Source of the DNA: Asterias rubens
Lineage: Eukaryota
Assembly (NCBI RefSeq): GCF_902459465.1
Contig: NW_022985705.1
Location: forward strand, 124,001 to 188,000
DNA length: 64,000 nt
Direction of reading: 5' to 3'
Shown here: positions 1 through 42,997 of the stretch, piece by piece
Numbering within the stretch: the first letter of the stretch is position 1
How the letters are laid out: each line of letters opens with the position of its first letter
The notes under the pieces: model-generated
What the model saw: the letters and a program-made list of their open reading frames with translations, nothing else
Databases searched by the model: none
What the model was told of the DNA's origin: nothing
Made by a program: the position numbers and the translations under genes

Positions 1-63
1 ATTGCTTTGGTTTGCCATTATTATGTCATTATTTTTTTTTTCCCTAAATGTCGTTGCTATTAA

Positions 64-2114: not shown

Positions 2115-2279
2115 TAAGTGGGAATATGGAAACGTGAGAATGTTTGACTGAGTTGGTCATTGATGTTGCAAGATAATAATGAAAGAAAAAAACAAAATGA
2201 ACACATTTTGTGTGTGTGTGCTTTCAGATACATAAAAAGGGCTACAGGCCTGAAGTGTTTTTTTTATTTGAGTGAGAAA

Positions 2280-2408
2280 TTGCCTCTTTCTCCAAAACTA
2301 CGCTACTTCAGAGGGAGTTGTTTCTTACAATGTTTTAAAATAATATAAACAGTTCTCCATTGCTCGTTACCAAGTTAGTTCATTTTTATGCTAACAATTA
2401 TGTTAAGT
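2280..2408 (-). repeat. Degraded fragment of Kolobok/T2-type MITE family B
   Basis: Matches the reverse complement of the copies at 25835 and 47703 (AAAACTACG..CTTCAGAGGGAG..TTTCT..ACAATGTTTTA..CTCGTTACCAAGT). Boundaries approximate. Confidence 0.6.
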
Positions 2409-2645
2409 ACTTACATCACCGAATTTAAAGTGCGCCTTTTTTAAAGGATACAAAGCGCTAGGGATAATGCAACCAAAAACCAAAAGAGAATAATATAAAT
2501 AATAGTAAGCAAAAATATTAGAAGTGACGAAACAAAAACACATTAGATGGAACGATTAAACAAATGTTTCATACTATAGTTACCAATGGGGTAAGATTGT
2601 GTGGGTTTCAAAATAATAATTTACAAATGTTATTTTACCTTTCAG

Positions 2646-2883
2646 AGCGGCTGTGCCAAATAGCACCAAGAGTGCTAGAGTTGTCAGATCAGGTGCCATT
2701 ATTATTCCGAAGGGTGTTAGTTTATCAGAATATCACAGAACCACGGCAGAATCTCTGTACCACACTGTATGCATTACAAAACATAATGGTAGGCTTGCCG
2801 CTATAATTGCATGGGGATGTCGACTTCGTGATTTACTTCAAATTACCGTGCCAAGTACAATGTCAGAATATATTGATCACTGA
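2646..2883 (+). CDS. Candidate terminal coding exon of an unidentified upstream gene
   Basis: Acceptor TTTTACCTTTCAG ends at 2645, followed by an open frame to TGA (AAVPNSTKSARVVRSGAIIIPKGVSLSEYHRTT...). More GC-rich than the flanks; AATAAA near 3233. No family recognised. Confidence 0.25.
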
Positions 2884-3439
2884 GTAATGCTGGTGCCGTG
2901 CGGCTGTTAAACGATTTTAATTATCTTCAGCAAAATCGATTGTTTTCGTTTGACGATCAAAGGCTATAGAAGATATAGTTTTATTGAGCCACGTATCATC
3001 ATTTTCTTGGCACCAGCACCAAGGTTATAAGCTTGCCTTTTAGCTTGCCATTATGCAGTCGCGTTGAATGACTTTGTGTGATGGCTAAAAATGTTCTATG
3101 CAATAACTTATTTTATGAATGGCTTGGATAAGATTTGATGTGGTGCACATTCTTATTTCATTAGAATTGCCATCCTCAAAACTTTTCCTGTTTTTTTTTC
3201 AAAGGATATTCCATTTTGAATCGGTTTAGAAGAATAAATAAATTCCCTTGAAAATCACTTCGATAGTGGCAAGTTCTAAGTGCATTTGAAATCCCCCATG
3301 AGGGCGTTTGTCTGCTTCACTACAGCAAAACGAAATACTTTTGGAACTTGGGGCATGCGGCAGTATTTGGAGTGTATAATTTCCTTATGCATAATAAAAG
3401 TTTTATTAAATTCTGACATGGAACTTTACCGATCATCAC

Positions 3440-3570
3440 TTAAAGCCATTGGACACTTTCTGATTAGAACAAAAATTAAAAGTTCAAAGATACAGAAGGG
3501 ATTTGCTCACGAAAGACTTCCCTTGAATTATTATTCCATGAAATGCTTTACTTTTTTAGTAACCATTAAA
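3440..3570. repeat. Truncated Kolobok/T2-type MITE family C
   Basis: TTAA+AGCCATTGGACACTTT end, followed by degraded similarity to the copy at 46992. Confidence 0.55.
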
Positions 3571-4056
3571 AGAAGAGGGCGCTATATCAGTCAATAATAA
3601 GAGCCGTATATCGGGACGATTAAAAACCACGATCACACAATTGGAAGTACGATTATTCCCTCGCATTTCAACCCGCTCAAAAATGCCGTAGAATTCGTTG
3701 AGCATACACTGTTACAAGTCTATGTCGTCCAAGTGCATGCTGATGTCACGACAAAGGACTGACCAAGTTTAGGAAATCAGCTGACACAGCCCCATTCCAA
3801 CTGGTACCTAAGCATAACAAAGCAAAAACACACATACTTACAGCATTGCACCATGCTAAATAGAACAGCCTACGAACCGTTCCACGTTCACGTACATAAA
3901 CAAGTCCTCTGTACACGGAAAACAATTCTTGAAAACATCCATTTCTTATGAAATGAATCGTTTTGAATAAAACAAGTATTTAAAAACTCCTGGTTAATCA
4001 TGTTTTATCATTTAGGGTAAAATCTGCTGAGATACTTTGATTTGAAGAATTCATTA

Positions 4057-4124
4057 TGACGTCACGCGGATTGATATTGGCTTGACGTGTTTATAAAGGA
4101 AGCAATGCCATTTTAATTTCCTCT
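4057..4124 (+). promoter_or_regulatory. Putative PABP core promoter: CRE, TATA-like box and TCT/5'TOP-like start
   Basis: TGACGTCA at 4057-4064, TTGACGT at 4082-4088, TTATAAA at 4091-4097, and a pyrimidine run TTTCCTCT at 4117-4124 about 28 nt after the TATA-like box. It lies directly upstream of the A-rich exon. Confidence 0.5.
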
Positions 4125-4322
4125 ACAACATTGACGCGGAGTGGTTGTGTGTGCAGTGAATACGTTCACACAACCCCATTTAAAATAAAACGTTCCTTTG
4201 GAACATAAAAAATACAAAAAAAGTTTAAAAGTAAAAAACCAACAAATAAAAAAAGTAAAGAAACTACTGTGCTTGCTGCAGACGAGGAAACTACGGGATT
4301 TTCAGCTTATATACGTGTAAAC
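4120..4322 (+). promoter_or_regulatory. PABPC1: Non-coding exon 1 of PABP with A-rich autoregulatory sequence (ARS)
   Basis: Oligo(A) clusters at 4182-4263, no upstream ATG, and a consensus donor GTAAGT at 4323. The matching acceptor TTTCCATTACAG ends at 5738, 20 nt before the PABP ATG. A-rich 5'UTRs are an established PABP feature. Confidence 0.65.
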
Positions 4323-5310
4323 GTAAGTCACATATGGAACTGATAAATGAAACTGAATGAAAATTTGCCAAGCACGTCGTTGGTGTTCACGTGTGGCGAA
4401 TGACGAGTAACAATTTCCCCGAAACGTGCTTTCATTTTTGGTGTGGTACAAAAATGGGTTATAATTCCGTGTCTGACTGCCACTTTTTCATTTATAACGA
4501 AATAAAATTATATCTTATTTACTGAACATCATTGCTTAGGCGTTGAATGAGTCGTTGATTGAGGACACTTATTTTTTTCTTCTATCTAATAATATTATAA
4601 AAATGTAATGTGATTGTGAGAGAGAAAGGCAGCGGCCGCGGCGGCGGCGGGAGGGTAGAATGATTGCGCAACTTAACTGTCATGTGATTCATGTTAGTGC
4701 CCCATAAAAATAAAAAATTAAACATTTATTATAGCGTTACTTAGTACTAGTTAGCGGTAGTAATACAAATTTACATGTATTTTATACTTGGGCTTACAGG
4801 CCTACAAGTACAATACAATACATGTCAAGAGTTTGATTCCTTTATTTTCTTTTTATAGCCTAATAAAGCCCTAATTTTAATTTAAAATTGTTTTATTTTT
4901 ACTTTGCCAGGAGATGTACAGCTTAGTCATGATTTGCCTGCTTTAACTTATTGTTGCGTAGGTCAAAATAGTTGCTTTAACTGCAGTGCAAGTGCAATTA
5001 TTGCATTGCATAGTATATAGTGTATACTTCACATTTCATACTACACAAGTTCAATATTTTATTGTATCCTCTGCTTACCTTGCCTTTTTCTTTGAATTGG
5101 AAAAAAAATAATGATGCCATATATCAACCGATGCCCTAATTATCTTTATTTGTTTTTATTAAGTATGCAAACATGTATTAAAACTTGATGAACATTGAAA
5201 TGTTCAAACCACACACCCATCTTCGATGACTTCAACTGGCCCCATTTGTTTTGAGTTTTTCCAGTTTTCACGGCAAACAAGAAAGCATGGTTTCCCTGTG
5301 AAGCCATACT

Positions 5311-5428
5311 AAAGATGTTGTAAAAGTAGAATACAATGATCTACACAAACATGCCTCGAAATTGCACGGTTTTCCTTTAACCTCTATGACCAACACGGTC
5401 GGCCATTTATGGGAGTCAAGTTTTTGAC
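5311..5428. repeat. Internal fragment of Kolobok/T2-type foldback MITE family A
   Basis: Near-identical to part of the copies at 10267, 25312 and 57003 (GTAAAAGTAGAATACAATGATCTACA...CGGTCGGCCATTTATGGGAGTCAA). Confidence 0.75.
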
Positions 5429-5439
5429 GTATACTAATT

Positions 5440-5612
5440 AGACTGGGTATTTCCTGCTGAAGTAAGTTTATGAGTTCTCAAAGATTTAGGACAGTCCTAC
5501 CTTAGGACTTGTCCTAGGAGATATAAAAAACGAATGGCTAGTCCTAAGTTTGGACCTGAAATCGTCCTAACTCGAGATAAGACTAGTCTTAACTCTTTGT
5601 GAAATCCACCCC
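5440..5612. repeat. Harbinger-like MITE end (…TTTGTGAAATCCACCCC)
   Basis: Terminal motif shared with 50205-50350, followed by AGG. TCCTAA/TTAGGA sub-repeats are also seen at 54020-54180 and 27765-27915. Confidence 0.55.
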
Positions 5613-5752
5613 AGGCCTAGTAATGTATGGAAAAATTTGGCCATTGTAAAAAGCCGAAGTGCGTGTCGTAATGATTATGGACTGCACTTCAAATTTAATA
5701 AAATCATTGACATTGGAGTTTCTCTCTTTCCATTACAGAACAAAACCAATAA

Positions 5753-16031
<10,279 letters not shown>

Positions 16032-18485
16032 TAACAGCAAGAAGCGCACCACAGCAAGCATGTACAACCCTTCATTCATTGGCTTTCTGCCTACACTTGC
16101 GTTCTCAAGAATAGTCGCTGTAAATACTAGCTTGGATCAGACACAAGATGGCATTCTCAATCATCCCAGCATGGATGCTATCATCCTTGATTGGGATGAT
16201 TGAATATCCAATGGTGGAGTCTAACCAATCCAAAATAAATCAGAATCTATAAGCTTCCGACACAGGCGGAGTGTAAAACACCCAATCAAGTTGTCATCAG
16301 TCAGTGACATTTAGACATATTCACACCGATTGTCACCATTTGTACAGGCATTTTTCAAGTTTCTACAGATTGTCTGGTATTGAATACTTTGCAGTGGATT
16401 TGGAGATTTCTGCATTGTGCATGGAATTTTACCTGTTTCAGAAATGTTTTTTGAAATGGGAGTAGCAACTTGAAAAATGACGGTCACTAAAGCATTTGAA
16501 ATGATCCAGATTGCAAGTTGTTCAAATTCGTCAGTGATTATTTGTAGAAACATACTGTAAAGTGTTTACTTCCTTTATTCATCGATCGATCGATTAATCA
16601 AGCGTCAATCAATCAATCTTCGGTACTAAGACAGGGATGATATGGTTGGCCCAAGTTCAAGTGAATATGCCCAGTCTTAGCATTATGTCTTGTGAAAGTG
16701 CTAAAAGGAAAGTCAAAGAATGGAAAGGTTTCATGTTGGGGGGAAACATTTCGTCGGTAAACATTAAGTAGATTTAGCAGAAGAACACTAAAAAAAAAAT
16801 CAAAAAGAACAAAAAAATAGTAAAATTGTGTGAAAAGGAAGTTGAGAAAAAAAAATTTTTGCAAAAAATTCTTCAACAAGCCAAGCTGCTTGGAAAGACA
16901 AACAAAAAAATCGAAAGAAATGTAAAACCAACAAAAAAAAAGAAAAAAAAACCACATTAAAAAAAAGCAAAATTCAAAATAAGGTGTTATCAATAGAGGG
17001 CAGTGTATCGAGAAAGAGACGACAAACGACGAATCCTTCAAGATTTCAGTGAGAGCAAAAAAATACAAAAAATAAAACAGTACAAACAAAGAAGAGATAA
17101 TCAACTAATTAAGCTGCACCAGTTGTAATGGTGTCTAAAAAAGAAAAAAAATATCTAATAAAAACGGAAAAATAGTCTTAAAAATGTTACAAAAATGTAA
17201 AACAGTTAAACAAAAAATGTTGCAAATTTATTGAGCAGATTGTTGCGCTTTCAATTATTATTTTTTGCTGTAACATCGTTATTTTTTATTCTGAGACTTC
17301 TTTAAAAAGAAACATGTTTGCGGAACACGTTGTTGAATTGATCTACGTATCGTACAGATTTGAAAAGGTAAATTTCCCCAAAGTATTCCATCAAAAGTTT
17401 CGGACAAGATGTCGAAGTATAGTGACAAAAATTAAGTTGACATTAGTTCATGTTGGTTATACTTGCTGAAACGAGGACAACAATAGAAATACCCTAGCAA
17501 GATAAACCCGTCAAAACCGTTACGGTGACCTCTTTGAACATTTATTTTATTTTAATTGCTTTAAGAAAACAATATGTTTTAAAGACGTGATAAATACTTC
17601 CAACTACATGTACATGTAAATGTTTTTAGTGAGAGCTTAAAATGTTGTTCCTTTTTTGGGAGTTGCGTAACGAGGTCCCACTACAGGGCCTGATTTAACC
17701 CAGCTGTTCAGTGTAAAATGGGAGTTTGAAAACAATAATCCGTGGCCCCTTCAGAACAATGCACAGGGCGGGCAAATGAACATTGCTCTTTGACCTCTCA
17801 TGGATAGCGCTGTACTCTAATAACGTCATGTGCACAAGGTCTATTACATAGCTGTTTAAGATGGTAACCATTTTCTGCTTAAGCAGATTAAGCTGTCCCT
17901 TATTATGTCACTCCCCCTTATGTAATCCCATCCTTTTATGTTTTTTATTTTAAATTTATTTTAATTTTGCACAAAAATATGGGAGAACTAGACCTGCAAC
18001 AGACCTGAACTGAAGCGGATGAACTGTTCCAACTAGTATTGTTTTTCTTCTGGTAAACCTCATGAATTGTAACATCTGGGAGGTACCGAGTTTAGAACTT
18101 GAAAAACATGTGCTATGCGGGAAACTTTCAAATTGTCCAAATTTAATCTCATCCAAGGTTTGTGGGGTAAACACTGTACCTCTATGAAGTAGCCTTAAGT
18201 GATTGCTCAACAGTGATGTTGTAAAGTTCAATTTTGGGACTAAACTTTCAACTTATTCTGTGCATCACTACAATGCCAGTTGCATGGTTAAAATAATGAA
18301 ATGTTTGTACATGTATTTTTTTTTAAGGCAAATAAGTAATTTCTTGTATAAGAGCCTTTATAATACAATGTACAATTATCCCTAAAATTGTGCACATTTT
18401 TTATGCTTTGTTCAGATTAAAAATAGCTGCTGTTATTTTGTTATGTTTTTGCTTTTTTTGTTTTGGTTTTTAAAAAGTCAAAGTT

Positions 18486-30890: not shown

Positions 30891-31766
30891 TTAAGACAAT
30901 GGACACTTTTGTTAATTACTAAAATAATTATTAGCATAAAACCTTACTTGATAACGATGGGGAGAGGTTGATGGTATAAAACATTGTGAGAAACGGCTCC
31001 CTCTGAATTAATTTAGTTTTCGAGAAAGAAGTAAATTTGATATTGAGACCTCAGATTTAGAACTTGAGGTCTCGAAATCAAACATCTGAAACCACACATT
31101 CCAACCTCGTGCGACAGATGTTTTTTATTTCATTACTATCTCGCAACTTAGACGATCAATATTGAGCTCAAATTTTCACAGGTGTGTTATTTTATGCTGA
31201 TGTGATACACCAAGTGAGAAAACTGGTCTTTGACAATTACCAAACGCGTACAGTGCCTTTAAGGCAGTGAACACCATTGGTAATAAATTACCAAAAATAT
31301 ATTTTATCATAAAACCTTTCTTGATTACCAGTAATTGGGATGGGAGAGGTTGATGAGGTTGTGAGAAGAATGGCTCCCTCTGAAGTAACGTAGTTTTTAA
31401 GAAAGCAAGTAAGTTTCCACGTAAGGTAACCCCAACATAATTATGCATAAAATAACAAACTTGTGAACATTTGAGCTCAATCGGTTATCGAAGTTGCGAG
31501 ATAATAATGAAAGAAAAAACACCCTTGTCAGACGAAGTTGTGTGCTTTCAGATGCTTGATTTCGAGACCTCAAGTTCTAAATCTGAGGTCTCGAAATCAA
31601 ATTCGTGGAAAATTACTTCTTTTTCGAAAACTACTCCACTTCATGGGGGGGGGGGCGTTTCTCACAATGTTTTATACTACCAACCTCTCCCCATTACTCA
31701 TTACCAAGTCAGGTTTTATGCTAATAATTATTTTGAGTAATTACCAATAGTGTCCACTGCCTTTAA
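30891..31766. mobile_element. Cluster of three family-B MITE pieces (full +, truncated +, partial -)
   Basis: Copy 30891-31262 shares its right TTAA (31259-31262) with a second left end (GGCAGTGAACACCATTGG) that is truncated near 31410. An inverted copy follows and ends CAATAGTGTCCACTGCCT|TTAA at 31766. Confidence 0.85.
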
Positions 31767-34309
31767 AAAATGGAAACATGATATCATACTTGCCTTTGTT
31801 GGTAGTCCGTTGCTTTGTAAGGTGCTGCACACATATTCATTAATAAGTTATGTTTAGTGTGGCTCATAACCTTTAATGTATGAACTTGCGTAGGCCTATC
31901 AGTTACACAATCTTACCTCTGCATTGTCGATAAGATAAACTGCGTCTAAATGCTCCGTTGGCTTTATTCTCTTTCCTGACTTCCTGCTTGTATTGTGTTA
32001 CGATCCAGCAAAAAAGTACAACAAATTTCCAGCACATGATCGCAATTTAATTCTGGTTGCATTTCACATATTCGTGCCAAGTTTCTATTTCGGTAAACGG
32101 TGTTTAGACAGCACGTGCTTATGTAGGATTTTCTTTTTTTACTTCCTCTTTTGTAAAAAAATATATACATGTATATATACATATGTTAATTTAACATTTT
32201 TTTATCTTAAAGTGAAGATAAACGTTGAATCCATCCACGTTTCGCGAAGTGACAGCGGGTACCAGCCGCATCTCTGGCCGCAGCATTCTTAAACGGACAC
32301 CACGCAAATTCTTGATGTCCAGCCATTCCTCAGAAATAATAGAAACGATTCATGAATCAATCGTGTATCAATTCCAAATGTTTTTGGGGGTGAAGAAACA
32401 TCCGAATTATTCTACTTTGAATGGAATCCCTTCTCAAAATATTGTTTATGCCTGTATCACCAGTTACAGTGCTTCATTAATTCGTTAGTTTTGGAGTAAA
32501 TTACCAATCTGTGACACTTCCTTTAACGGTACGGAAAAGATTCCCAAGGGAGCCACAGGGTTGAAACTGAGATGTTATAACTAAAGGTCATAATAATAGC
32601 AATGGTTGTGGAACTGGCTTAGACTCCAATACCTCTGACGCACACGTAAATTCAAGAACTTTGCCTGTGGAATCGGGTAAAAAAGATCAACATAAACAAA
32701 GTTAAATATCAACACTGAAGCGGTTCCCGCCTTTTAATAACTATACATTCAATATATTTTGCTTCAAGTTGTTCACTCGGACCTCGGTGCTTGTCGAAAC
32801 TACAGATCCTACAAGTTTATAAAACTGATTGTGGATCTAGCCTTCATCATGGGAGAGGGCATCATAACTGAATGTGAAAGTCCACCATGGCCAAGATGGG
32901 TTCTCGTTGCACTGACTCTATTGGGAGTGTTTAAGGGTACACTGTAAAAAATAGTTAGTCAATCTTGCTTATAAATTGGTCAAAATGACTAAGTTTGCCT
33001 AGTCCTGTGTCTCTGACTAATGTAATGTTAGCCTGACTAATCTTATATTTGCTGTGACTAATCACTATAAGTCAGAACTTTAACCCGTGACTAGAATTTT
33101 GTTTGGACTAAAACGATTTAGTCAAAATGTCGGGTTTTGACTAATTTTGACTGGTATGAAGCTACGGTGCTTTGACTAAGTAAGATTGGTCATGTTCCCG
33201 CCTTCCCAACATTTTAGATGTGGGAAAAATATAAATTGCCCGCGAATTAGCAGGATGCTGGTACCCGGCGGCAACGTCAATGTATAGTTAGTGTGTAACT
33301 TGGGTTTTTAGCTTGTACCCGTTAACTTGCAAACTGCAGCTAGCATGCAGGGCGTACATGATACTCTCCCGTTCGGCGTGTGTGATACATACACTTCACA
33401 GGGCAAGGAGGCTCAATCCAGGCTCCGACCAGTTTCAGAAATAAGGTGAGAATATTGGTTTTCCCGTTACATTTTTAAAACCGTAACATACTTAGCCAGA
33501 GGGAGACCGTTACATTGACGTTAGTCTACAATCATATTGTGGAAAAGCTTTTAGTGTTTTTGGCCACAGAACTCTAGGTGCATAGGCCAGCACTTAACGG
33601 CGGCTAGGCCTTGCATTACGTGTCAAAATGGAGCATGCAGGCGAAGTTTATCAGGTAGATTCAAGTTTAAAATCTCTGATTTTCACCCTATAATTAATAT
33701 TGCCAGACTGAGAATTTAATGTAGAACACTTTATTGTAAAGTTTGTATATTTTCAAGATATAGCGACTGTAAAAGGACGAAACAAAAAAGCTTGTTTAGC
33801 ATGTTGTTGTTTTTCCAGTGGGGCTACGGGCGTGTGTATAGTGTACGTGTGTGTACACAAACGATGGGCCTAATCATTGTAGTTTGTATGCAATGCATGC
33901 CCTTGCTTTAGGCTTTACTGCACGACACATGATGTGCAAGGCCTAGTCGGTTAATGTTTAAATCAACCCATGCTATATTATAATATTATGGGGATGGTCA
34001 AAGCTTATTATTTATTGGCCATCATAAAGTGCGGTCCTAAATGTCTTCCAATCAGCAAGGACTTTACATTTAAAAATAAGTTCATATTCATAACTAACTT
34101 GAATTTGAAAACATGGGCATTAAAGTTTCCATGTAACAAACGTAGGCCTAACGACAAGTAACAAGTAATAACGGTAGCATGTTCGGAAAATCAAGTGTAC
34201 CAAGCGATGGAATGTAGTTATCGCAACTCTATAGTCCATCAGCCCCAAATTTTGGACTATCAAGTTAAGACTTATAATGTAGCAACTAACGAGGACAAGG
34301 TATAATTCT

Positions 34310-34817
34310 TTAAATGTTTACTGAAGCACAAAGTATTGATACTTTTATGTTGCACCTCATAATTTTTTTAATGATTTAGTTGTAAAAAATCATTTTATAC
34401 ATTCCATTGTACACATGATTTATTTCCTTTAAAAAATAAGGCTTCAGGAATGCCAACAAAAATAGGTCACTTGCTGACAATGGCTGGATTCTCAATGTGA
34501 CATCATCTTACATGTTTCCTGAGCTATTCCAGAAAACAATTGTTCTGAAATGGGGTCTGTCAAATGAATGACAAATATGTGTTTTTTCTTTTAACAGACT
34601 CACTCAATTCTGTTCAATGAATGTGAGGTCATGTTGAGAATCTAGCCATGTCAAAAAGTGACCTATTTAGGAGTTCATGAAGACAATTATTTTTAAAGGA
34701 AATAAATCATTTAAAATTACACAGGGATGCACAAGACTTTTTTCCAACTTAATCATTTAAAAACAATATAAGGTGCAATATCAAAGCATCATACTTTGTA
34801 TTTCAGTAAACCTTTAA
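34310..34817. mobile_element. Kolobok/T2-type foldback MITE nested in the EnSpm element
   Basis: TTAA|ATGTTTACTGAAGCACAAAGTA ... TACTTTGTATTTCAGTAAACCT|TTAA; inner inverted pairs ATGATTTATTTCCTTTAAAAA / TTTTAAAGGAAATAAATCAT and AATAGGTCACTT / AAGTGACCTATT. Confidence 0.7.
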
Positions 34818-35080
34818 ATATATGTAATAATTGCATCATGGGAAATGAGTAAAACAAATGTCTTGCCCTACACCGATTTGATAAGCACTGTATACTCAGG
34901 AGCTTTCAAGTCCTGGGGAAAAAGTTCCACAGGCAACTCAGGTGGGTTTCGAACCCACAACTTAACCACTAGACCACTGAGCAAGGCGGATCCAGTATTA
35001 TTTGCAGTGGGTACCGGGCTTGGTGGTCTAGACATCTGCTGTAGTCACGCAGGAGTCATAGGTTCGAATCCTGACAAGGG

Positions 35081-35368
35081 CCCAATTTCATAAAGCTGTT
35101 TACCGGTAAGCACATTTTTGTGCTTACTGTTGCAGAAAAATGTGCTCAAGCATACATATGTAAACGTATTTCATTCACCATGATTTCTCAAGTTAGCAGA
35201 AAATTTCGTAGCGCGCATGCACGTTCACCATGGATTTGCATTGTTACGTCACTCATGTGCTAACAGCGGGTTAGCCAGCATTTACCCTTGCTTACGATAA
35301 ACAGCTTTATGAAATAGAAATTCTGCTGAGGGAACTGCTGCTTACATCTTTTATGAAATTGGGACCAT
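35081..35368. mobile_element. Family E Harbinger-like MITE nested in the EnSpm element
   Basis: GGCCCAATTTCATAAAGCTG at the left end and TTTATGAAATTGGGACC at the right. Confidence 0.65.
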
Positions 35369-35982
35369 GTTGCCTGTGGAATTTTTTATCCGCAAGACTC
35401 GAAAGCACTGAATATATATACAGTGCTTATCACATCGGTGTAGGGCAAAACAAAATTTTAAGGCATCATCTATACTCACACCACACTGAATATTTGTTCC
35501 TTTTTAGCACAATTATAAGCCACAGACTTCACAGAACTTGGAGAGAAAATATTTTGACAACCATCTCCACTGAGTGGGGATTGTTTTATGCAAAAAATAA
35601 TAACCATCAGAACTGTGAGCTCTTTTGTTTTGTTTACAGCTTAGCTTGCTTAATTGTATGTTCTGATTGGTTGCCATTCAAGTTCTAAATATAAAACAGC
35701 ACCTGTAACTCAAATGCGGGACAATACATCTTTCAAACATTGTCTTTTTAAAATCCATCCTGTCTGCATTTAAATAGATAAGATGTTTCATTTAAGATTT
35801 TCTGTTATTTTGAATACTTTTATTTAATAGTAAAGTTGTAGGTTTTGCTATATTTCCGTTGTAGTCTGAGCAGCTTTGTCCTGTGAGAAACCCATTTCAT
35901 CATCAGCAGCATGTCTTGGAAGGCAAGGTTAGTTTCTAATTTTTGTTATTCTGTAAACCGCCAAGATTTGAATTTGGCTTAT

Positions 35983-37123
35983 GGGTCATTCCATGTCAGT
36001 TCAACAGGCTTTTGGACCTGACCTTCACGGATCGACACAAAATTTGGTGTGCTGATTTGACTTACTGAGAAACCCCCAGAACTGAATTTTTATGTCATTC
36101 AGATAATTACTTTTTGAGATACAGGTTAACAAACTTTTGACTAATTAGCTTGACCCTCTATGTTTGGACAACCATATCTCCAAAAGTAAAGCACCCACAT
36201 AACACTTTCCACTATTTTAAAGCTCTTGACGGAGAAAAAAATTCCACTTAGCATTTAACAAAATTACGCACAATTTTTTTGGGGGTGGGGGGGGGGGGCA
36301 TGTGGGGGCAAAGATTTTACTTTTGGGGCCCAAGAAGTGCAAGCCATTTAATATGTTACTTGATTTACACATTTTAAAAAAACATTTTTTATGATTTCAA
36401 TGAGGGTTGGGGGGGGGGGGGGGGGGAGGAGGAGGGGGTGGAGGCCGCCCTGCCCCCACCCCTTCTAATTATGCCACTGCACATGAGTCATGTCATGGGA
36501 CATGTTTTTAAAGTTACAGTACTAACTATTATAGGCCTACTGTATACACGTGTACATGATGTACGTGTACATGATGTACGTGTACATGATGTACATGTAC
36601 AGCTGTATACATGTATGTACACCTGCATATGTACATTCATTTAAAGTTTTTAACCTTTATAGCCTGTGTTCATATTATCATAACTCCAAAACTGTAAGAG
36701 TGCCCATCCTAAATTTTTCTGAAAATGTTGCTTATATCATGAGCTAACAATGAAAAAATTACGCATTTTGAAAAATATACATTTTCGCAATCAAGGGCAA
36801 ATGTCACATTTGTGCGTAATTTTGTTGTGCTACGTGGAATTTTTTCTCCTTATTTTATTAAATGAAGGCCATGTCAAGAGCTTTAAAATAGTGGAAAATT
36901 TATTTATGTGGGTGCTTTACTTTTGGAGATATGGTTGTCCAAACATAGAGGGTCAAGCTAATTAGTCAAAAGTTTGTTAAGCTGTATCTCAAAAAGTAAT
37001 TATCTGAATGACATAAAATGTCTGTTCTGGTGGTTTCTCAATAAGTCCATTCAGCACACCAAGTAACGTTTCAATCTGTGTTGGTCAAGTCCAAAAGCGT
37101 GTTGAATTGACACGGAATGACCT
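35983..37123. mobile_element. Long-TIR element (~250-bp arms) nested in the EnSpm element
   Basis: 35983-36230 (GGGTCATTCCATGTCAGTTCAACA...AAAGCTCTTGAC) is the reverse complement of about 36873-37123 (GTCAAGAGCTTT...TGTTGAATTGACACGGAATGACC). Superfamily not assigned. Confidence 0.75.
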
Positions 37124-37790
37124 ATTGTCATGTTTTGATAACCATCTCTAAAAATAAAACACCTAGGGGCCTACAGTGATAATTTTTACACCAGTTTAAA
37201 GCTCTTAATATGTCCCAGATTTCATAAAAACTAAATCAACATTATATTATGTACCACAAAAACATTAATTACGCAAAAAAATTACATTTGACCTTGATTA
37301 GCAAGGTCATTTTTTTTATATGTATAATTTTTATCTCAATGTTAGCTTAAGATGTACATTAGCAATATTTCTAGAAAAGGTTGGGATGGGCACGCGCACA
37401 GTTTGAATTATGATTATTTGAACAATGGCGGTTAAGGATGAAAACTTAAAAAGTATGTACATATGCGTGTGCTTATTATGTGCATGTATAATAATGTACA
37501 TGTGTAAAAATATTACCTTTGACCTTGATTAGCAAAATGCATTTTTCAAAAGGCATAATTTTTATCTCATTGTTAACAATATTTCTAGAAAAAAACTGAA
37601 CAATATGTCAAACTTAACAATATGTCAAAAAATTATGACATACAATTTTAATTATCAATTTTTTTTTCAAAGTCCTTTAAAAGCAGTCATGTGACAAGGT
37701 GATGAAGGACCAAGCCAGAGACGAGGAAGTCCTTTAACATTCTAGAATAACATTCTTTAAAATAAGTATGTTTTTCTGCATTTTTTACAG

Positions 37791-39317
37791 AAGCTATCAG
37801 TATTGCTGCCATCCTTGGCATCCCATGTACACTAAAAGAAAAAATCTGCAATATGTTGATTCTGGGTGATGAAGATGGGGTAAGTAAAGGGTTGCTCACA
37901 CTGCAGCCGTAACAAGAAACAATAACACTCAAAAGAACATGGTCTATTGGTTGAATAAGCATGCGCATATTCCACACAGTATAATTAACCAGTAGACTTA
38001 AACAATTGAGTGCATCTCTGTTTCTTGTTTTTGTGATGCATCTCTGCTTTTTAAATAAGGGAATAAAAGAGTGGTAGTGAGGTCTTAAATGACCCTTTAA
38101 GACTGGCAGGGTCATGTCCATGCAATAAAGGGCCAAGTTTGAATGGGCATGGTTTATGTCAGCATTGCGTCATTAAGGTAGGCGTGTGGCTATGAGTGCT
38201 TAACACGCGTTAGCCAACCGGTCTTAAACAAGTCCAGCTCAGACATAAAAACACCCCCATGTGACATGCTCTCCATTGGGAATAGCGAAACTGTCTGGGA
38301 TATTTATGAATGAATGATCAAATCCAAAACTCTTAATTGACTTACTCATGACTTGAATTATAACTTGTATTAATTTGTCACATGTTGGGTTGAATTAACA
38401 CTCAACTTCATGGACTTAACTTGGACTCAACTCAAACGCAAGACAAAGACTTGAACTCAAGAAAAGAAAGACATTGATAATTTTTGAATGACTGATATAC
38501 AAACTCTCAAATTCACCTTCGGTTACAATTCACTTTTGGCTGAACAAACAAAAGTGAAGAATACATTATTTGGACCTTGGACCACCATTTATCCTACACT
38601 ATGCATGAGGCAGTCTCATTTTATATACTCATAAACTGATGAGGGTTTTTGAAATTGCATCTGCAACATACCAATGGCCAATTTGTGTTGTTTTGAATTA
38701 ATAAACTCCTCAGAGAGAGTATATGCACTGTGATTGGTCGAAGAGTGGTCACGTTGGGGTGTATTAAAATGTGATGTAAAGACAAGTTCTGTGGAACAAG
38801 TGAAAATTCACAGTAAAGGTATTAATTCATGGGAACAACAGTGTGAGGACCTGGTCTTCACTGGGTAGTAATGACCATGGCCGCTGTTAATGAAAATCGC
38901 TTTTGGCTTGGTCCATTAACAACAGCCAGCCACCAACCCGGTCATTACCACACAGTGAAGACCAGGTCCTCACACTGTTATTCCCTAATTAACACACTGT
39001 TATTCCCTAATTAAAAGTATTTATTTTTTCATATACAGGGGACAGCTTGGCCTGTCATTGAGGGTAATGACAACAGACTTGAGGACTGCACTTCATTTGA
39101 CGTGATCATTGATGGGTTGGCTGTCAGCAGCTCCACTTGTCTCCTGACATCGGTGAAAGTGTATTTAGCCAGCTTTTATGTTTTCAATTTGGCTTATCCC
39201 ACATGCCTCAGGAAAACTTTGTCTTTTTTCCAGAAAATTGTCCTGAACATCCAAGACAATATTCCTCTCGACCGCAGTGTTATATCTTGCCTGGACAAAC
39301 TGAATAGGTACATTTGA
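37791..39317 (+). CDS. Last two exons of the transposon's accessory ORF (resembles the C-terminus of SAMD3-like/EnSpm second-ORF proteins)
   Basis: Exon 37791-37879 (AISIAAILGIPCTLKEKICNMLILGDEDG) splices in phase 0 to 39039-39317 (GTAWPVIEG...FDVIIDG...YLASFYVFNLAYPTCLRKTLSFFQKIVLNI...DKLNRYI*). The FYVFNLxYP...FFQK motif is recalled from such proteins, not searched. Confidence 0.55.
38822..39013. repeat. Hairpin element with a duplicated right end
   Basis: AACAGTGTGAGGACCTGGTCTTCACTG / CAGTGAAGACCAGGTCCTCACACTGTT inverted arms. ACACTGTTATTCCCTAATTAA is repeated twice at the right end. Confidence 0.7.
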
Positions 39318-39338
39318 CTGTGACCATTTTTCTTGGTT

Positions 39339-39715
39339 AAAGCAATGTGTTACTAACATAAACCAAGTAACTGCATTTGACTCAGTAGTTCCTCTTGATC
39401 AAAGCATTGTGTCTTACTAGATAAACAAGTTACATGTACATATACTGCATTTGACTCAGTATGTTCCCCTCGATCAGATCATTGTGTGTTTATACTAAAG
39501 TAAACCAAGTTAAGCTGCATTTGACTCATCAGTATTTTTCCTCTTGATAAACGCATTATGTCTTACTATGAACAAGTTTTACTGCATTTGACTTAGTATG
39601 TTCCTCTCAAAGTATTGTGTCTTACTAAAATAAACCAAGTTAAACTGCATTTCACTTAATTAGCATGTTCCTCTTGATCAAAGCATTATGTCTTGTTAAG
39701 ATAAACTGAATATTC
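39339..39715. repeat. Minisatellite, about 6 degenerate 60-75 bp units
   Basis: Recurrent AAAGCATTGTGTCTTACT...AACCAAGTT..ACTGCATTTGACTCAGTATGTTCCTCTTGATC. Confidence 0.85.
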
Positions 39716-41519
39716 TTCTTAAAGGTACATTACAGGATTGATAAGGATCACTCAAATACTTTAATTGTTGAATTTCTGTTTGAAAGCTTAATGGTTATGA
39801 AGTTAGTACTAGGACTGTGAAATGTTTCCCCCTGAAATAAGGGCATATTCGAAAAAACTACCTGATAATCTAAAAACAAACAACATCTGATTTTGTTTGT
39901 TAACAACCCAAATTGACCATATGTGTACAAAATAACCATTGTTCATTGATTTCTCTATAACATTAATAACGATTTGATACAAATCACAAGTTTGTTTTAA
40001 GATGTAATTGAATTGAATGCATCCAACCAAAAGCCAATCCTGTATCGTACCTTTACCCTAAGAATTAAATCTTACTTGTGACAATTCACTTCAAATAGTT
40101 TTGACAGGGTGCCTTTGGAATAGTGGATGGGCCTCTGGCAAAATATTGACTTGACAGTTGTTGTATTATTCCAGTGTTCGTTGGAAGTTTTCTTCTTAAA
40201 TAGGGAGGGGGGGTAACCTGAAACATAGGAAAGTAAATAGTTTTCCTTGAATATTGTTGTGAACAGAGGCATTATATCCATGTTTTTACAACACGTGTGA
40301 TTCAGGATGTCATTATCTCTTATAGCAATTTGATAATCTCAGTTTGAACATCATAATTCTTACATCATTGGGCATCATTTGTGTTAAGAAAAAAATGCAT
40401 TTTGAATAGACTGAAATGTTTGCATAAAGATGTAGGGATGTAAATTTAAATTAGTGTCAATGGAGCTTTTTCTCAAAAGTAGCAGTTGTACCTGGCCACG
40501 GTGACCCCCAGTTAAAAACAATGATGTTCTTGATTATAACAACCCCAGATCTGCCAAATGTAATGTCATTTGGACAAAAATATAATGACAAATATGGAGA
40601 AAATATATACAGTCGTAAACATTGGGCAAAAACCCTCTGTTGGTACTTTTTTTTTTAAATGTCATCTTGTATATTTGAAGGAATTTTTAGCAGATAAATA
40701 AAATTGAAGGGAAACTGTAGGGGTTCAAGAACCCTCTTTTGAGAAAGTAAAGGGTAAATGAGTGTGCTAATTTTAAACAAGCAATTTTATCACATTATTT
40801 ATTTATAAATTGTGTGGAGTTCAATGAACTTTGAGTCACCATTGTATTAGTTATGCCTTGTTGAGATTAAATTTGAATTAAAGAATTTTCAGAATGTATA
40901 AAGTTGTCGAAGTATACTTTCTAGTAAGATTTTAATTTATAATCCATCTTAAATTCTAAATGGTTTCTTTCATGGAAAACAGTTTAGAAAATGATTTTGT
41001 TTTTGGATGAACAATTTTCCATTTTTTGTTTGATGATGCAACAATACACAATGTCCAGGTACATCAAAAGAACGTGGGAAGACATTCCTGACTGATGCCA
41101 CTAGTCAAGATTTAAATTGTTGCTTTGACTAATGCCATTAGTCAAATCAACGAACGACCTAAGTGAAGTACTGGACCAAGATTAAAAGTCGCTGGACTAA
41201 TCTAAAAAGTCGCTGGACTAAGCCAAAATGTTGATGGACTAAACATTAGTCGTATGAGACATCTTTTTAGTCAAGTCACTGGACTAATGTAAACTAGTCA
41301 CATTTCTGACTAAATCCTTAGTCATGCTCAGACTTTTGACTACTTAAAATTAGTCGTGTCAGACATGACGCTGGACTATTTTTTTTTAGTCAAATTGACT
41401 AATTAATTTTTAGAGTGTACCACGATACAGGCAAATAGACGATGCCTGCTTTGTCGTCAAAAACGTGAAGGCATTGAGTGTATATTTGAAGGTAAGAACC
41501 ATAGATTTATGTTATGGGA

Positions 41520-42105
41520 TGCACCGGCACTGACCGTTGCTAAGATTTGTCGAACACAAATTAGTCGCTCATAATGTGTCATTAGTACATGGACCATGTC
41601 TATCAAGCTGTATAGACAAATGCGTTAATTATAATGGTGTATGTGTACGACTGGTCAATGTCCGACAAGACATGTCGGACACAATGTGTCGGTCATAGGG
41701 TCATGCACTAATTAAGTGGAATTATGTTCCGACAATGGTTTACTTACACGACATATAGGTTATTATGTACCACACAATTATTCGGACACATTAAGTCCAT
41801 AATGTGTCACGTGGTGTACTATTTGTCGGAACATTATGCGGTATCGGACTCATTGGGTTGGACAAAATGGGTCACGTGCACGACAAGGGTCACTTTGTAC
41901 GACAATATTTGTTGGACTCATTAGTCGATCGTAATGGGTCATAGTTTCTGGGCCATATGTCTGGCATGATGTACCGGACAGGGTGTGTCAGACATTAATA
42001 GGTCACGTGCACGACATTGGTACGACAAGACATGTCGGTCATAATGGTTCATGTAGGCCTACTATGCATGGACATTTTGTCCGACATGATGTATCGCACA
42101 CCATA
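41520..42105. repeat. Degenerate repeat built from CCGACA/TGTCGG motifs
   Basis: Repeated CGACAAGACATGTCGG, TGTCGGTCATA and GGTCACGTGCACGACA. Confidence 0.6.
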
Positions 42106-42497
42106 CTCCAGCTCTAATGTAAAAATTTACCCGGATTGAGATCCCAGAACTACTTTGGGGTCAGGCTGACCAGGAAACTAGTTTAAAAAATTGTGAATTT
42201 GTTTCGAATTTCGCACCAGTTTTCAATTCAATTCAATTCAATATGGTTTATTTTCATATAAAATACAAGACCAAAAAAAAGTCATAGACTCATGGCATTT
42301 GGTTAACAAAAAATTACATCAAAAATATATGTACAAGTTTACATGATAAATCAATAGTATTAAAAAGTTTGATCCGTTTCTGGATCAGTTTGCCACAGAA
42401 ACCGGATCAAACTGACCCGGTATCTGAAAAAATCAAGCCACACTGGTCTAGGAATCGGGGTCATGATCAATATTCTTATCAGGAAGTTTAAGAGGTT

Positions 42498-42997
42498 NNN
42501 NNNNNNNNNNNNNNNNNNNNNNNNNNNNNNNNNNNNNNNNNNNNNNNNNNNNNNNNNNNNNNNNNNNNNNNNNNNNNNNNNNNNNNNNNNNNNNNNNNNN
42601 NNNNNNNNNNNNNNNNNNNNNNNNNNNNNNNNNNNNNNNNNNNNNNNNNNNNNNNNNNNNNNNNNNNNNNNNNNNNNNNNNNNNNNNNNNNNNNNNNNNN
42701 NNNNNNNNNNNNNNNNNNNNNNNNNNNNNNNNNNNNNNNNNNNNNNNNNNNNNNNNNNNNNNNNNNNNNNNNNNNNNNNNNNNNNNNNNNNNNNNNNNNN
42801 NNNNNNNNNNNNNNNNNNNNNNNNNNNNNNNNNNNNNNNNNNNNNNNNNNNNNNNNNNNNNNNNNNNNNNNNNNNNNNNNNNNNNNNNNNNNNNNNNNNN
42901 NNNNNNNNNNNNNNNNNNNNNNNNNNNNNNNNNNNNNNNNNNNNNNNNNNNNNNNNNNNNNNNNNNNNNNNNNNNNNNNNNNNNNNNNNNNNNNNNN
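42498..42997. other. Assembly gap (500 N)
   Basis: Run of exactly 500 N. Confidence 1.

What the first reader, a model, noticed from the sequence alone, without database searches (positions are those of the whole stretch)
32849..41491. Third 7-TM paralog disrupted by an 8.5-kb EnSpm/CACTA transposon; removing it restores the exon exactly
Seen: ...GTG TTT AAG GGT A|CACTGTAAAAA [8478 bp] TTTTTAGAGTG|TA CC ACG ATA CAG.... Deleting the element and one TA gives GVFKG-TT-IQANRRCLLCRQKREG, collinear with paralog 1 (GVFQG-RP-LQVTRPCILCRRKPPG), and ends at the same phase-1 donor. The ORF track misses this because the halves are 8.5 kb apart. The flanking exon has no stops or frameshifts, so the knockout may be recent or polymorphic (inference). 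This captures a birth-and-death event in a putative receptor cluster.
Basis: seen in the sequence. Interest (0 to 1): 0.72.

Follow-up and report, generated by a model that had tools for sequence, protein, structure and literature searches.

The report
Recently mobile transposon splitting a receptor gene
An 8.5-kb cut-and-paste transposon that has lost its own enzyme gene sits in the first coding exon of a taste-receptor-like gene in a sea star; the uninterrupted version of the exon also exists, so this is a real, recent and ordinary gene knockout by a transposon family that still looks mobile.

Summary
Window 32940-41417 is an 8,478-bp element with CACTG...GAGTG termini and TA on both sides. 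It splits exon 1 (32849-32939 and 41420-41491) of a GR-like 7-TM paralog.

An empty site with a single TA lies 97 kb away on the same scaffold, in front of a gene whose three coding exons are all open.

Contigs of other public samples show three states of the site: empty (two samples), both haplotype types at about 1:1 (the probable source animal), and an extra TA on a filled-type haplotype (one sample). The last is probably an excision footprint.

The element is a non-autonomous deletion derivative of a 15.2-kb element. One full copy carries an intact 809-aa transposase with two C2H2 fingers, an invariant D-D-E triad with C(2)C and H(3)H motifs, and a RAG1/Transib-like fold (Z 21.6). This places it in the CACTA-Mirage-Chapaev group. 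As in other animal CACTA elements, the target duplication is 2 bp, not the 3 bp of plant En/Spm.

There are about eight insertion sites in the genome, 98.5-100% identical.

Caveats: the locus lies on a gap-ridden unplaced scaffold with redundant copies, so allele versus recent paralog is not settled. The filled junction was not seen directly in reads. The scan had already noted other CACTA elements and this receptor family elsewhere in this genome.

The parts
32849..32939 (+). Exon 1 of receptor paralog 3, 5' half (ATG to the target TA)
   Evidence: Open from the ATG. Collinear with the first exons of paralogs 1 and 2. 1 substitution in 1.88 kb against the left flank of the empty copy.
32938..32939 (.). 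Left copy of the TA target-site duplication
   Evidence: Every copy of the family has TA at both ends. The empty site has a single TA.
32940..41417 (+). Non-autonomous 8,478-bp transposon of the CACTA-Mirage-Chapaev group, an internal-deletion derivative of a 15.2-kb element
   Evidence: It aligns to the 15.2-kb copies on C15, C32 and C24 as positions 1-4746 plus 4737-8478, with 6.7 kb (including the transposase gene) missing.
32940..32950 (+). 5' terminal inverted repeat CACTGTAAAAA
   Evidence: Identical in the other copies.
32955..33179 (.). 5' subterminal array of GACTAA/TTAGTC motifs (9 copies in about 240 bp)
   Evidence: Only 3 copies occur in the middle 7.7 kb, and the window background is about 0.15 per kb per orientation.
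33346..33446 (+).
   Evidence: Sequence only. Inferred from the two-gene design noted earlier for this genome (s1-150324). Not tested with RNA.
35981..37125 (.). Internal inverted duplication (222-nt arms, 90% complementary), present in all copies
   Evidence: (pair I1).
37676..37685 (+). Junction of the 6.7-kb internal deletion that removed the transposase gene
   Evidence: Imperfect 10-nt similarity (TTTAAAAGCA against TTTATAACA) at the two break points in the long copy.
39015..39314 (+). Open 100-codon exon of the element's conserved accessory gene
   Evidence: Identical in 7 copies. Matches at 30-48% amino-acid identity at 25 or more other genomic places, several of them 4-9 kb downstream of related transposase genes on the same strand.
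41127..41402 (.). 3' subterminal array of GACTAA/TTAGTC motifs (13 copies in about 300 bp)
41407..41417 (+). 3' terminal inverted repeat TTTTTAGAGTG
41418..41419 (.). Right copy of the TA target-site duplication
41420..41491 (+). Exon 1, 3' half, up to the phase-1 donor G|GTAAGA
   Evidence: Collinear with the empty copy, where the exon is continuous.
42498..42997 (.). Assembly gap (500 N) that ends this copy's right flank after 1.08 kb; exons 2-3 of this copy are not in the window
   Evidence: The other right-flank copies run on for 7.7 kb or more and carry the remaining exons.

Best explanation
An internally deleted, non-autonomous copy of a low-copy, recently active cut-and-paste DNA transposon of the CACTA-Mirage-Chapaev (CMC) group inserted at a TA in the first coding exon of a GR-like 7-TM receptor paralog. 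It duplicated the TA and truncates the product to 32 residues.

The copy keeps both termini and the subterminal GACTAA arrays, the presumed transposase-binding sites. It can therefore be moved in trans by the 809-aa transposase of the 15.2-kb full-length copies. That transposase has two N-terminal C2H2 fingers, a RAG1-like catalytic core with D279, D373 and E626, a C393-x2-C396 motif and an H602-x3-H606 motif.

The insertion is not fixed. An empty version with a complete, open gene is on the same scaffold and in other samples. One sample carries GGTATACC on a filled-type haplotype, which is most simply read as an excision footprint.

Shown: the element, the TA duplication, the empty site, the copy structure, the intact open reading frame, and the fold and motifs.
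Inferred: trans-mobilisation, allelic status, excision, and loss of receptor function.
For: Junctions and exon restoration.

TA at every end of every copy.

Two independent filled/empty pairs with a single TA in the empty form:
- the host exon;
- a copy nested inside another copy on C24, compared with the uninterrupted C15 copy.

Family structure: 15.2-kb copies, and 8.5- and 7.3-kb deletion derivatives, 98.5-99.7% identical.

Intact 809-aa open reading frame at L037:1368-3797(-).

Transposase identity:
- 7,089 relatives in the HMMER search.
- Invariant D373, C396, H602, H606 and E626; near-invariant D279 and C393.
- 11 of 41 relatives match Pfam Transposase_21, 5 match DUF4218 and 2 match Plavaka.
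- AlphaFold model with mean pLDDT 90.6. The 49 best Foldseek matches are all RAG1, RAG-like or Transib. VIA-align gives Z 21.6, rmsd 4.5 A, 460 aligned residues, model 109-666 on RAG1 477-1025.

Subterminal motif arrays.

Literature:
- Animal CACTA elements have CAC..GTG termini and a 2-bp duplication (PMC6004678).

Population evidence:
- X3 and X5 contigs span the empty site.
- X1 holds C and A at L038:3052 at word depths of about 155 and 143, with left and right flank depths of 331 and 311.
- An X4 contig spans the site with TA put in behind L038:3047. It also carries 5 of the 7 diagnostic filled-haplotype variants it covers (2715, 3052, 3326, 3348, 3368).
Against: - The filled junction itself was not displayed in read-derived contigs. 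Loose ends at the site were not among the rows shown, so support outside the assembly is indirect (contig breaks at 3050/3053 and the 3052A contig ending 6 letters from the site in X1).
- Only Logan contigs were available, not raw reads, so zygosity and copy number rest on mean word depths.
- The scaffold is unplaced, has three N gaps and holds large near-identical direct and inverted duplications.
- Copy B joins a different left flank to the same right flank; this may be a chimera or a real rearrangement.
- Two of the three long copies show frame-breaking single-base indels. Given 61 gap openings against 13 substitutions, these may be assembly errors, but they could be real.
- No Pfam model reaches its cut-off on the transposase itself.
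- No RNA evidence for the transposase was found.
Confidence: 0.85

Rival explanations
1. The filled copy and the empty copy are two recently duplicated loci (paralogs) present in every animal, not alleles. The insertion would then be fixed in one duplicate, and the species keeps an intact twin.
For: - Both forms lie on one scaffold, 97 kb apart.
- The cluster clearly duplicates: three paralogs in the window, and a paralog-2-like exon downstream of the empty copy.
- The right flanks differ by 2% while the left flanks differ by 0.05%, a mosaic that gene conversion between paralogs could produce.
- A 1:1 depth ratio in X1 fits this reading as well as the allelic one.
Against: - X3 (depth about 19) and X5 show only the empty-type variant at L038:3052, and X4 shows only the filled-type variant. 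Fixed paralogs should give both in every animal.
- In X3 the contig spanning the site has the same depth as its flanks (18.8 against 19.3-20.5).
- The scaffold shows typical signs of uncollapsed haplotypes: an inverted duplication of about 2 x 31 kb at 99.5% identity, bounded by gaps, and the same insertion flank on three small scaffolds.
Confidence: 0.25
2. The extra TA seen in sample X4 is an ordinary 2-bp indel polymorphism (TA against TATA) unrelated to the transposon, not an excision footprint.
For: It is a single contig at depth 6.5 from a marine metagenome. TA repeats are prone to slippage.
Against: - The change is exactly one extra TA at exactly the insertion point.
- It sits on a haplotype carrying the filled-type variants at 2715, 3052, 3326, 3348 and 3368.
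- The filled allele has only one TA on each side, so it cannot have arisen by insertion into a TATA allele with a TA duplication.
Confidence: 0.3
3. The junctions are assembly chimeras: a repeated 8.5-kb element was wrongly placed between two halves of an intact exon.
For: The assembly around the site is poor (gaps, redundant copies, and copy B with a foreign left flank). The copies differ mostly by single-base indels, which suggests unpolished long-read sequence.
Against: - Both junctions lie precisely at one TA with a perfect 2-bp duplication, as in all other copies.
- The right junction was assembled three times with the same flank.
- In X1 short-read contigs break exactly at the site, and a filled-type variant 5 bp away is present at half depth.
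- The footprint-like allele in X4 implies that an element once sat there.
Confidence: 0.03
4. The element belongs to a TA-targeting superfamily other than CMC, such as Tc1/mariner, or is a Transib or RAG-like transposon.
For: A TA target duplication is the hallmark of Tc1/mariner. The transposase fold is closest to RAG1 and Transib.
Against: - No Tc1/mariner-type domain or fold appears. The length (809 aa), the C(2)C and H(3)H motifs and the subterminal repeat arrays do not fit Tc1/mariner.
- By established knowledge, Transib and RAG-like elements make 5-bp duplications; here it is 2 bp.
- Relatives match Transposase_21, DUF4218 and Plavaka, not RAG1 models. Identity to RAG1 is only 12-13%.
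Confidence: 0.03

Closest known systems
Animal EnSpm/CACTA elements (for example ENS1_Cis of Ciona savignyi and the CMC-NA MITEs described in PMC6004678)
   Same: Invariable 5'-CAC...GTG-3' termini, a 2-bp target duplication, non-autonomous derivatives moved in trans, and paralogous empty sites as proof of transposition.
   Different: Sequence relationship to those named families was not tested because no reference sequences were available. Here the duplication is always TA, and the element is 8.5-15 kb with a second gene.
Plant En/Spm (CACTA) with its internally deleted dSpm/I derivatives
   Same: The same design: an autonomous element and deletion derivatives that keep the termini and subterminal repeat arrays, insertion into exons, and excision that leaves footprints. 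Relatives of the transposase weakly match Pfam Transposase_21 (tnp2) and DUF4218.
   Different: The termini are CACTG/CACTC, not CACTA. The duplication is 2 bp (TA), not 3 bp. The transposase is encoded by an intronless open reading frame with N-terminal C2H2 fingers.
RAG1 / Transib transposase (solved structures such as 6dbx, 6oep, 6pqx)
   Same: The fold of the whole catalytic core (Z 21.6 and 16.0). By established knowledge of mouse RAG1 (D708, C727/C730, H937/H942, E962), the spacing of the motifs is almost the same here: D373, C393/C396, H602/H606, E626.
   Different: 12-13% identity, a 2-bp instead of a 5-bp duplication, no RAG2-like partner gene, C2H2 fingers at the N-terminus, and a BAH-like domain at the C-terminus.
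ESTA (EnSpm-like transposons with TA duplications) of rust fungi (PMC12730594)
   Same: CMC/Transib-type motifs combined with a TA target duplication.
   Different: ESTA is a fungal lineage, some members of which carry a TET/JBP gene. No relationship was tested.

Membership tests
CMC / CMCT clade (CACTA/EnSpm-Mirage-Chapaev, with Transib) | DDE triad in an RNase H-like core | tested here: met
   D279 is present in 40 of 41 sequences; D373 and E626 in 41 of 41. They lie on or next to the strands and the helix expected in the model. This rests on conservation and fold, not on biochemistry.
CMC / CMCT clade (CACTA/EnSpm-Mirage-Chapaev, with Transib) | [quoted passage not shown] | tested here: met
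   C393-x2-C396 lies 20 residues after D373. H602-x3-H606 lies 20 residues before E626. All are invariant or nearly so.
CMC / CMCT clade (CACTA/EnSpm-Mirage-Chapaev, with Transib) | Termini 5'-CA(C)...(G)TG-3' | tested here: met
   CACTG...GAGTG in all copies.
CMC / CMCT clade (CACTA/EnSpm-Mirage-Chapaev, with Transib) | Target duplication of 2-5 bp (2 bp in animal CACTA, PMC6004678) | tested here: met
   TA, shown by two filled/empty pairs and by TA at all 17 inspected ends.
CMC / CMCT clade (CACTA/EnSpm-Mirage-Chapaev, with Transib) | Fold shared with RAG1/Transib, the only solved members | tested here: met
   Foldseek E 1e-9, with the top 49 hits all RAG1, RAG-like or Transib. VIA-align Z 21.6 for RAG1 and 16.0 for Transib.
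CMC / CMCT clade (CACTA/EnSpm-Mirage-Chapaev, with Transib) | Match to the curated Pfam models Transposase_21 / DUF4218 above their cut-offs | tested here: inconclusive
   This protein gives no match. Of 41 relatives, 11 match Transposase_21 (best E 9.2e-8), 5 match DUF4218 and 2 match Plavaka. Where scores were shown they were below the gathering score.
CMC / CMCT clade (CACTA/EnSpm-Mirage-Chapaev, with Transib) | Placement among EnSpm, Mirage or Chapaev reference transposases in a phylogeny | not testable with these tools
Plant-type En/Spm CACTA in the strict sense | CACTA terminal pentanucleotide and 3-bp target duplication | tested here: not met
   The termini are CACTG and CACTC (reverse complement of GAGTG). 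The duplication is 2 bp.
Tc1/mariner | TA duplication together with a Tc1/mariner-type DD(E/D) transposase | tested here: not met
   The TA duplication is met, but the transposase is a RAG1-fold protein with C(2)C and H(3)H motifs.
Transib / RAG-like transposons | 5-bp target duplication; RAG2-like partner gene (for RAG-like elements) | tested here: not met
   The duplication is 2 bp. No Pfam match to a known family, RAG2-like included, on any open-frame piece tested beside the transposase gene.
Gustatory-receptor-like 7-TM channel family (the host gene) | Recognisable 7tm_7 / GR-like sequence or fold | tested here: inconclusive
Pfam gives nothing. The language-model search lists clusters carrying 7tm_7, Trehalose_recp, DUF267 and DUF3537 at scores of 0.93-0.97. 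I did not fold this protein.

The most novel reading that the evidence does not exclude
This family is mobile today in wild sea stars: it inserts in the germline (a polymorphic exon insertion) and excises (the TA footprint allele), driven by an intact RAG1-fold transposase with C2H2 fingers and a C-terminal BAH-like, possibly chromatin-reading, domain. That would make it a naturally active CACTA-type element in a deuterostome, and a tractable relative for comparison with RAG and Transib and for use as a transposon tool in echinoderms.
Probability: 0.45. Interest if true: 0.6.

Novelty: new member of a known kind. Interest (0 to 1): 0.4.

Why it matters
This is a clean, well-documented case of a DNA transposon knocking out one member of a fast-evolving receptor cluster. 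Three states of the site are visible in public data: filled, empty and footprint-like.

The transposon side is the more useful. The family has about eight nearly identical insertion sites, deletion derivatives, a copy inserted into another copy, and at least one intact transposase gene. It is therefore a good candidate for a currently active CACTA-type element in an echinoderm.

Its enzyme shares the whole core fold and motif spacing of RAG1. Such an element could serve to compare cutting chemistry and target choice (2-bp TA against 5 bp) within the RAG1/Transib/CMC group.

For the receptor family, the practical points are that this paralog is not uniformly functional across animals, and that the assembly of this scaffold over-counts copies.

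Tried and rejected
- Pfam on the transposase and its pieces gave only weak C2H2 matches.
- A profile search against the sequences of solved structures found only the two C2H2 fingers. The RAG1 relationship appears only at the fold level.
- Pfam on candidate accessory-gene pieces gave nothing. A look-up of earlier findings by sequence was blank.
- A search for RNA runs holding the transposase gene found no run on record as RNA. Runs of unknown kind hold up to 76% of its words, and a 'starfish metagenome' cDNA library holds 18%. Expression is therefore unresolved, and no read-laying run was left.
- Only Logan contigs were available, with no raw reads. Zygosity, true copy number and read-level junctions could not be measured. 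Loose ends at the site were not among the rows shown.
- I first read the transposase gene of the C15 copy as a pseudogene with six or more frameshifts. I dropped this as a firm claim after finding that the indels are private to each copy, lie mostly in short single-base runs, and outnumber substitutions 61 to 13. The C24 copy is open.
- I considered that the three insertions with the same right flank on C35 show duplication after insertion. I rejected this in favour of redundant assembly because left- and right-flank depths in X1 are equal (331 against 311), and copies B and C form a gap-bounded inverted duplication.
- I did not use the search for homologous proteins, complex prediction or the metagenome and genome locus scans, because the questions did not need them.
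- Splicing out of the element, or use of its donor at 33446, was not tested.

Full report
**The observation**

The window reads ...GTGTTTAAGGGTA|CACTGTAAAAA at 32939/32940 and TTTTTAGAGTG|TACCACGATACAG at 41417/41418. Its 11-nt ends are 10/11 complementary, and the repeat finder extends the arms to 40 nt at 80% (pair I7).

Upstream, an ATG at 32849 opens MGEGIITECESPPWPRWVLVALTLLGVFKG. Reading into the element gives T-L-stop, a 32-residue product. Taking out the element and one TA gives GVFKG-TT-IQANRRCLLCRQKREGIECIFE, followed by G|GTAAGA at 41491/41492.

The first exons of the two neighbouring paralogs on the minus strand (about 22588 and 30590) are collinear and also end in phase-1 donors. 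The phase is the same; the position differs by a few codons.

**It is a mobile element, and the target duplication is TA**

The first 401 bp and the last 358 bp of the element occur at 7 and 10 places in this 417.6-Mb genome, at 98-100% identity. All 17 inspected ends abut TA, in otherwise unrelated flanks.

Sorting by flanks leaves about eight distinct insertion sites. Three small scaffolds (C32, C38, C83) carry the same flank and are therefore redundant.

Two independent filled/empty pairs prove the duplication:
- The host exon (next section).
- An 8.5-kb copy inserted, inverted, into a 15-kb copy on C24. It reads GCCAT-TA|element|TA-CATTA, where the C15 copy reads GCCATTACATTA.

The hexamer GACTAA/TTAGTC occurs 9 times in the first 240 bp and 13 times in the last 300 bp. 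It occurs only 3 times in the middle 7.7 kb, against a background of about 0.15 per kb per orientation. These are subterminal arrays of the kind that bind transposase in CACTA-type and several other element families.

**The empty site**

The window is C35:124001-188000. At C35:253546 the same scaffold reads ...GGGAGTGTTTAAGGGTACCCCGATACAGGCAAATAG.

The left flank matches window 31053-32939 with 1 substitution in 1.88 kb. The right flank matches 41418-42497 with 22 substitutions in 1.08 kb.

Behind the empty site the whole gene is open: exon 1, a short exon 2, and a 369-codon last exon. Pfam does not recognise the protein. The language-model search lists clusters carrying 7tm_7, Trehalose_recp, DUF267 and DUF3537.

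**State of the assembly**

In the window the right flank ends after 1.08 kb at a 500-N gap (42498-42997). Exons 2-3 of this copy are not there.

Two more element copies on C35 have the same right flank:
- Copy B (C35:193159-200428) is 7.27 kb and has a different left flank.
- Copy C (inverted, from C35:241561) is cut by a gap.

B and C, with the blocks that follow them, form an inverted duplication of about 2 x 31 kb at 99.5% identity, bounded by gaps. The host locus occurs nowhere else in the genome: the left flank is at 2 places and the right flank at 4, all on C35.

**Independent samples**

Only Logan contigs were available. I laid four runs on the empty locus, L038:1000-6000, where the site is at 3046-3047.

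- **X1**, probably the source animal. Contigs break at 3050/3053. Position 3052 shows C (empty type) and A (filled type) at word depths of about 155 and 143. The left and right flanks have depths of 331 and 311. Equal flank depths mean the extra right-flank copies B and C are not additional real copies. The 1:1 ratio means one filled and one empty class.
- **X3 and X5.** Contigs run across the empty site with the empty-type base only. In X3 the spanning contig has the same depth as its flanks (18.8 against 19.3-20.5).
- **X4.** A 1,143-bp contig crosses the site with TA put in behind 3047, reading GGTATACCACG. It carries the filled-haplotype bases at 2715, 3052, 3326, 3348 and 3368.

The filled allele has one TA on each side, so it cannot derive from a TATA allele by a TA-duplicating insertion. 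The simplest reading is excision of the element with both TAs left behind. That allele would still be frame-shifted by 2 bp.

Taken together, I read the insertion as polymorphic and probably heterozygous in the reference animal (about 0.7). Two recent paralogs remain possible. The footprint reading I put at about 0.6-0.7.

**What the element is**

Compared with the 15.2-kb copies on C15, C32 and C24, the window copy lacks 6.7 kb in the middle. The junction is at window 37676-37685, with short imperfect similarity at the break points. The missing part holds the transposase gene.

In the C24 copy this gene is an intact, intronless 809-codon open reading frame (L037:1368-3797, minus strand). In the C15 and C32 copies it is broken by private single-base indels. 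Across the 15.2 kb those two copies differ by 61 gap openings but only 13 substitutions. I therefore treat these breaks as possible assembly errors, not as established pseudogenes.

The protein has 7,089 relatives at E 0.001 or better in the representative library. Full-length relatives are about 800-900 aa. In an alignment of 41 of them:
- D373, C396, H602, H606 and E626 are invariant;
- D279 and C393 are nearly invariant.

This gives D...D...C(2)C...H(3)H...E, the signature stated for the CACTA-Mirage-Chapaev-Transib clade (PMC12730594).

The spacing is close to what I recall for mouse RAG1. Here the C(2)C motif starts 20 residues after the second D, and the E lies 20 residues after the H(3)H motif. 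In mouse RAG1 the corresponding residues are D708, C727/C730, H937/H942 and E962 (established knowledge, not tested here residue by residue).

Other evidence on the protein:
- Pfam gives nothing for the protein itself. Of its relatives, 11 of 41 match Transposase_21 (tnp2 of En/Spm), 5 match DUF4218 and 2 match Plavaka.
- The AlphaFold model is confident (mean pLDDT 90.6, pTM 0.82).
- Its 49 best Foldseek matches in the PDB are all RAG1, amphioxus RAG-like or Transib transposase.
- VIA-align gives Z 21.6 (rmsd 4.5 A, 460 residues, model 109-666 on RAG1 477-1025) and Z 16.0 for Transib. P-element transposase follows at Z 9.1.
- The N-terminal 60 residues are two C2H2 fingers.

The genome holds 50 or more further loci encoding relatives at 27-43% identity, many with open frames of 750-940 codons.

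**Classification**

CAC...GTG termini, a 2-bp duplication and subterminal arrays match what is described for animal CACTA elements (PMC6004678). Chapaev makes 3-4 bp duplications (PMC4079192). By established knowledge, Transib and RAG-like elements make 5 bp and plant En/Spm makes 3 bp with CACTA ends.

So 'EnSpm/CACTA' is right in the broad, animal sense and not in the strict plant sense. The exact lineage needs a tree with curated references, which I could not build.

**Mechanism**

Shown: the structure, the TA duplication, the empty site, the intact enzyme gene elsewhere in the genome, and the fold and motifs.

Inferred:
- The enzyme from full-length copies binds the GACTAA arrays of this defective copy and cuts at the CAC...GTG ends.
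- It integrates at TA with a 2-bp stagger.
- The insertion abolishes the receptor product.
- Excision leaves TA-TA.

**Verdict**

This is a real and well-supported transposon insertion polymorphism in a receptor cluster. It is a new member of known kinds on both the element and the event side. The transposon family looks currently mobile and is the more interesting half. Interest 0.4.

The scan had already noted other CACTA/EnSpm elements with a second gene, and the receptor family itself, elsewhere in this genome.

Noticed in passing
L037:1371-1805 (-) = C24:360871-361305, residues 665-809 of the transposase (not in the window): The C-terminal 145 residues of the transposase fold on their own into a confident beta-rich domain (mean pLDDT 94.5). 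Its 15 best matches among 48,161 representative chains are all BAH domains (MET1, DNMT1 BAH1, TNRC18, ZMET2, AIPP3, ASH1L, ORC1 and others), at Z 5.3-8.9 with about 92-112 residues aligned. The Z values are middling, so this is a lead. If real, the RAG1-fold transposase carries a possible histone-mark reader. Y715, F733 and Y790 are nearly or fully invariant.
   Followed up: partly
window 39015-39314 (+); also L036 about 4766-8140 (+): The element carries parts of a second, spliced gene downstream of the transposase. The 100-codon piece in the window is open and identical in 7 copies. It has 30-48% amino-acid matches at 25 or more other places in the genome, several of them 4-9 kb downstream of related transposase genes on the same strand. 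Pfam does not recognise it. The ATG...GTGAG piece at 33346-33446 may be its first exon.
   Followed up: partly
C35:188001-262000 (loci L022, L028, L032-L035, L023, L029): The scaffold beyond the window repeats window blocks 5311-16203 and the element plus right flank, in direct and inverted order, at 98.5-99.9% identity. The breaks fall at N gaps, and there is an inverted duplication of about 2 x 31 kb centred near C35:224830. This probably reflects uncollapsed haplotypes or palindromic mis-assembly, so gene counts for this receptor cluster from this scaffold are inflated.
   Followed up: partly
C35:193159 (locus L001), left end of copy B: Copy B joins a unique left flank (...GTGTTCAAGGGAAGGTA|CACTG) to the right flank of the receptor exon, and has its own internal deletion (element positions 3479-4737). 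It is either a chimeric contig joined inside the repeat or a real recombinant between two insertions. It implies one more insertion site whose right flank is not assembled.
   Followed up: no
C24:335656-369000 (loci L024, L030, L025, L031): The only long copy with an intact transposase gene is itself interrupted downstream of that gene. One interruption is an inverted 8.5-kb copy of its own family with a TA duplication. The other is an unidentified insertion of about 8.6 kb flanked by AAACA on both sides.
   Followed up: partly
Loci L003, L006, L011, L015 (flanks of the C99, C24 and C15 copies): The 3' flank of the C15 copy resembles the reverse complement of the 5' flank of the C24 long copy. 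The 5' flank of the C99 copy resembles the reverse complement of the C24 3' flank. The element seems to sit at the same TA of a diverged repeat in both orientations, which hints at a preferred target or at a larger composite unit.
   Followed up: no
window 32940-32946: The 5' end CACTGTA matches 6 of 7 positions of CACTGTG, the reverse complement of the V(D)J heptamer CACAGTG (the heptamer is from my own knowledge). This is in line with the CAC termini shared across the RAG1/Transib/CMC group. No claim is built on it.
   Followed up: no
L038:1167-2001 = C35:251667-252501, and window about 31053-31900: The stretch just upstream of the receptor gene is a very high-copy repeat. Word depths are 10^6-10^7 in X1 and X3, against about 300 and 20 for the flanks, with many joints and loose ends.
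   Followed up: no
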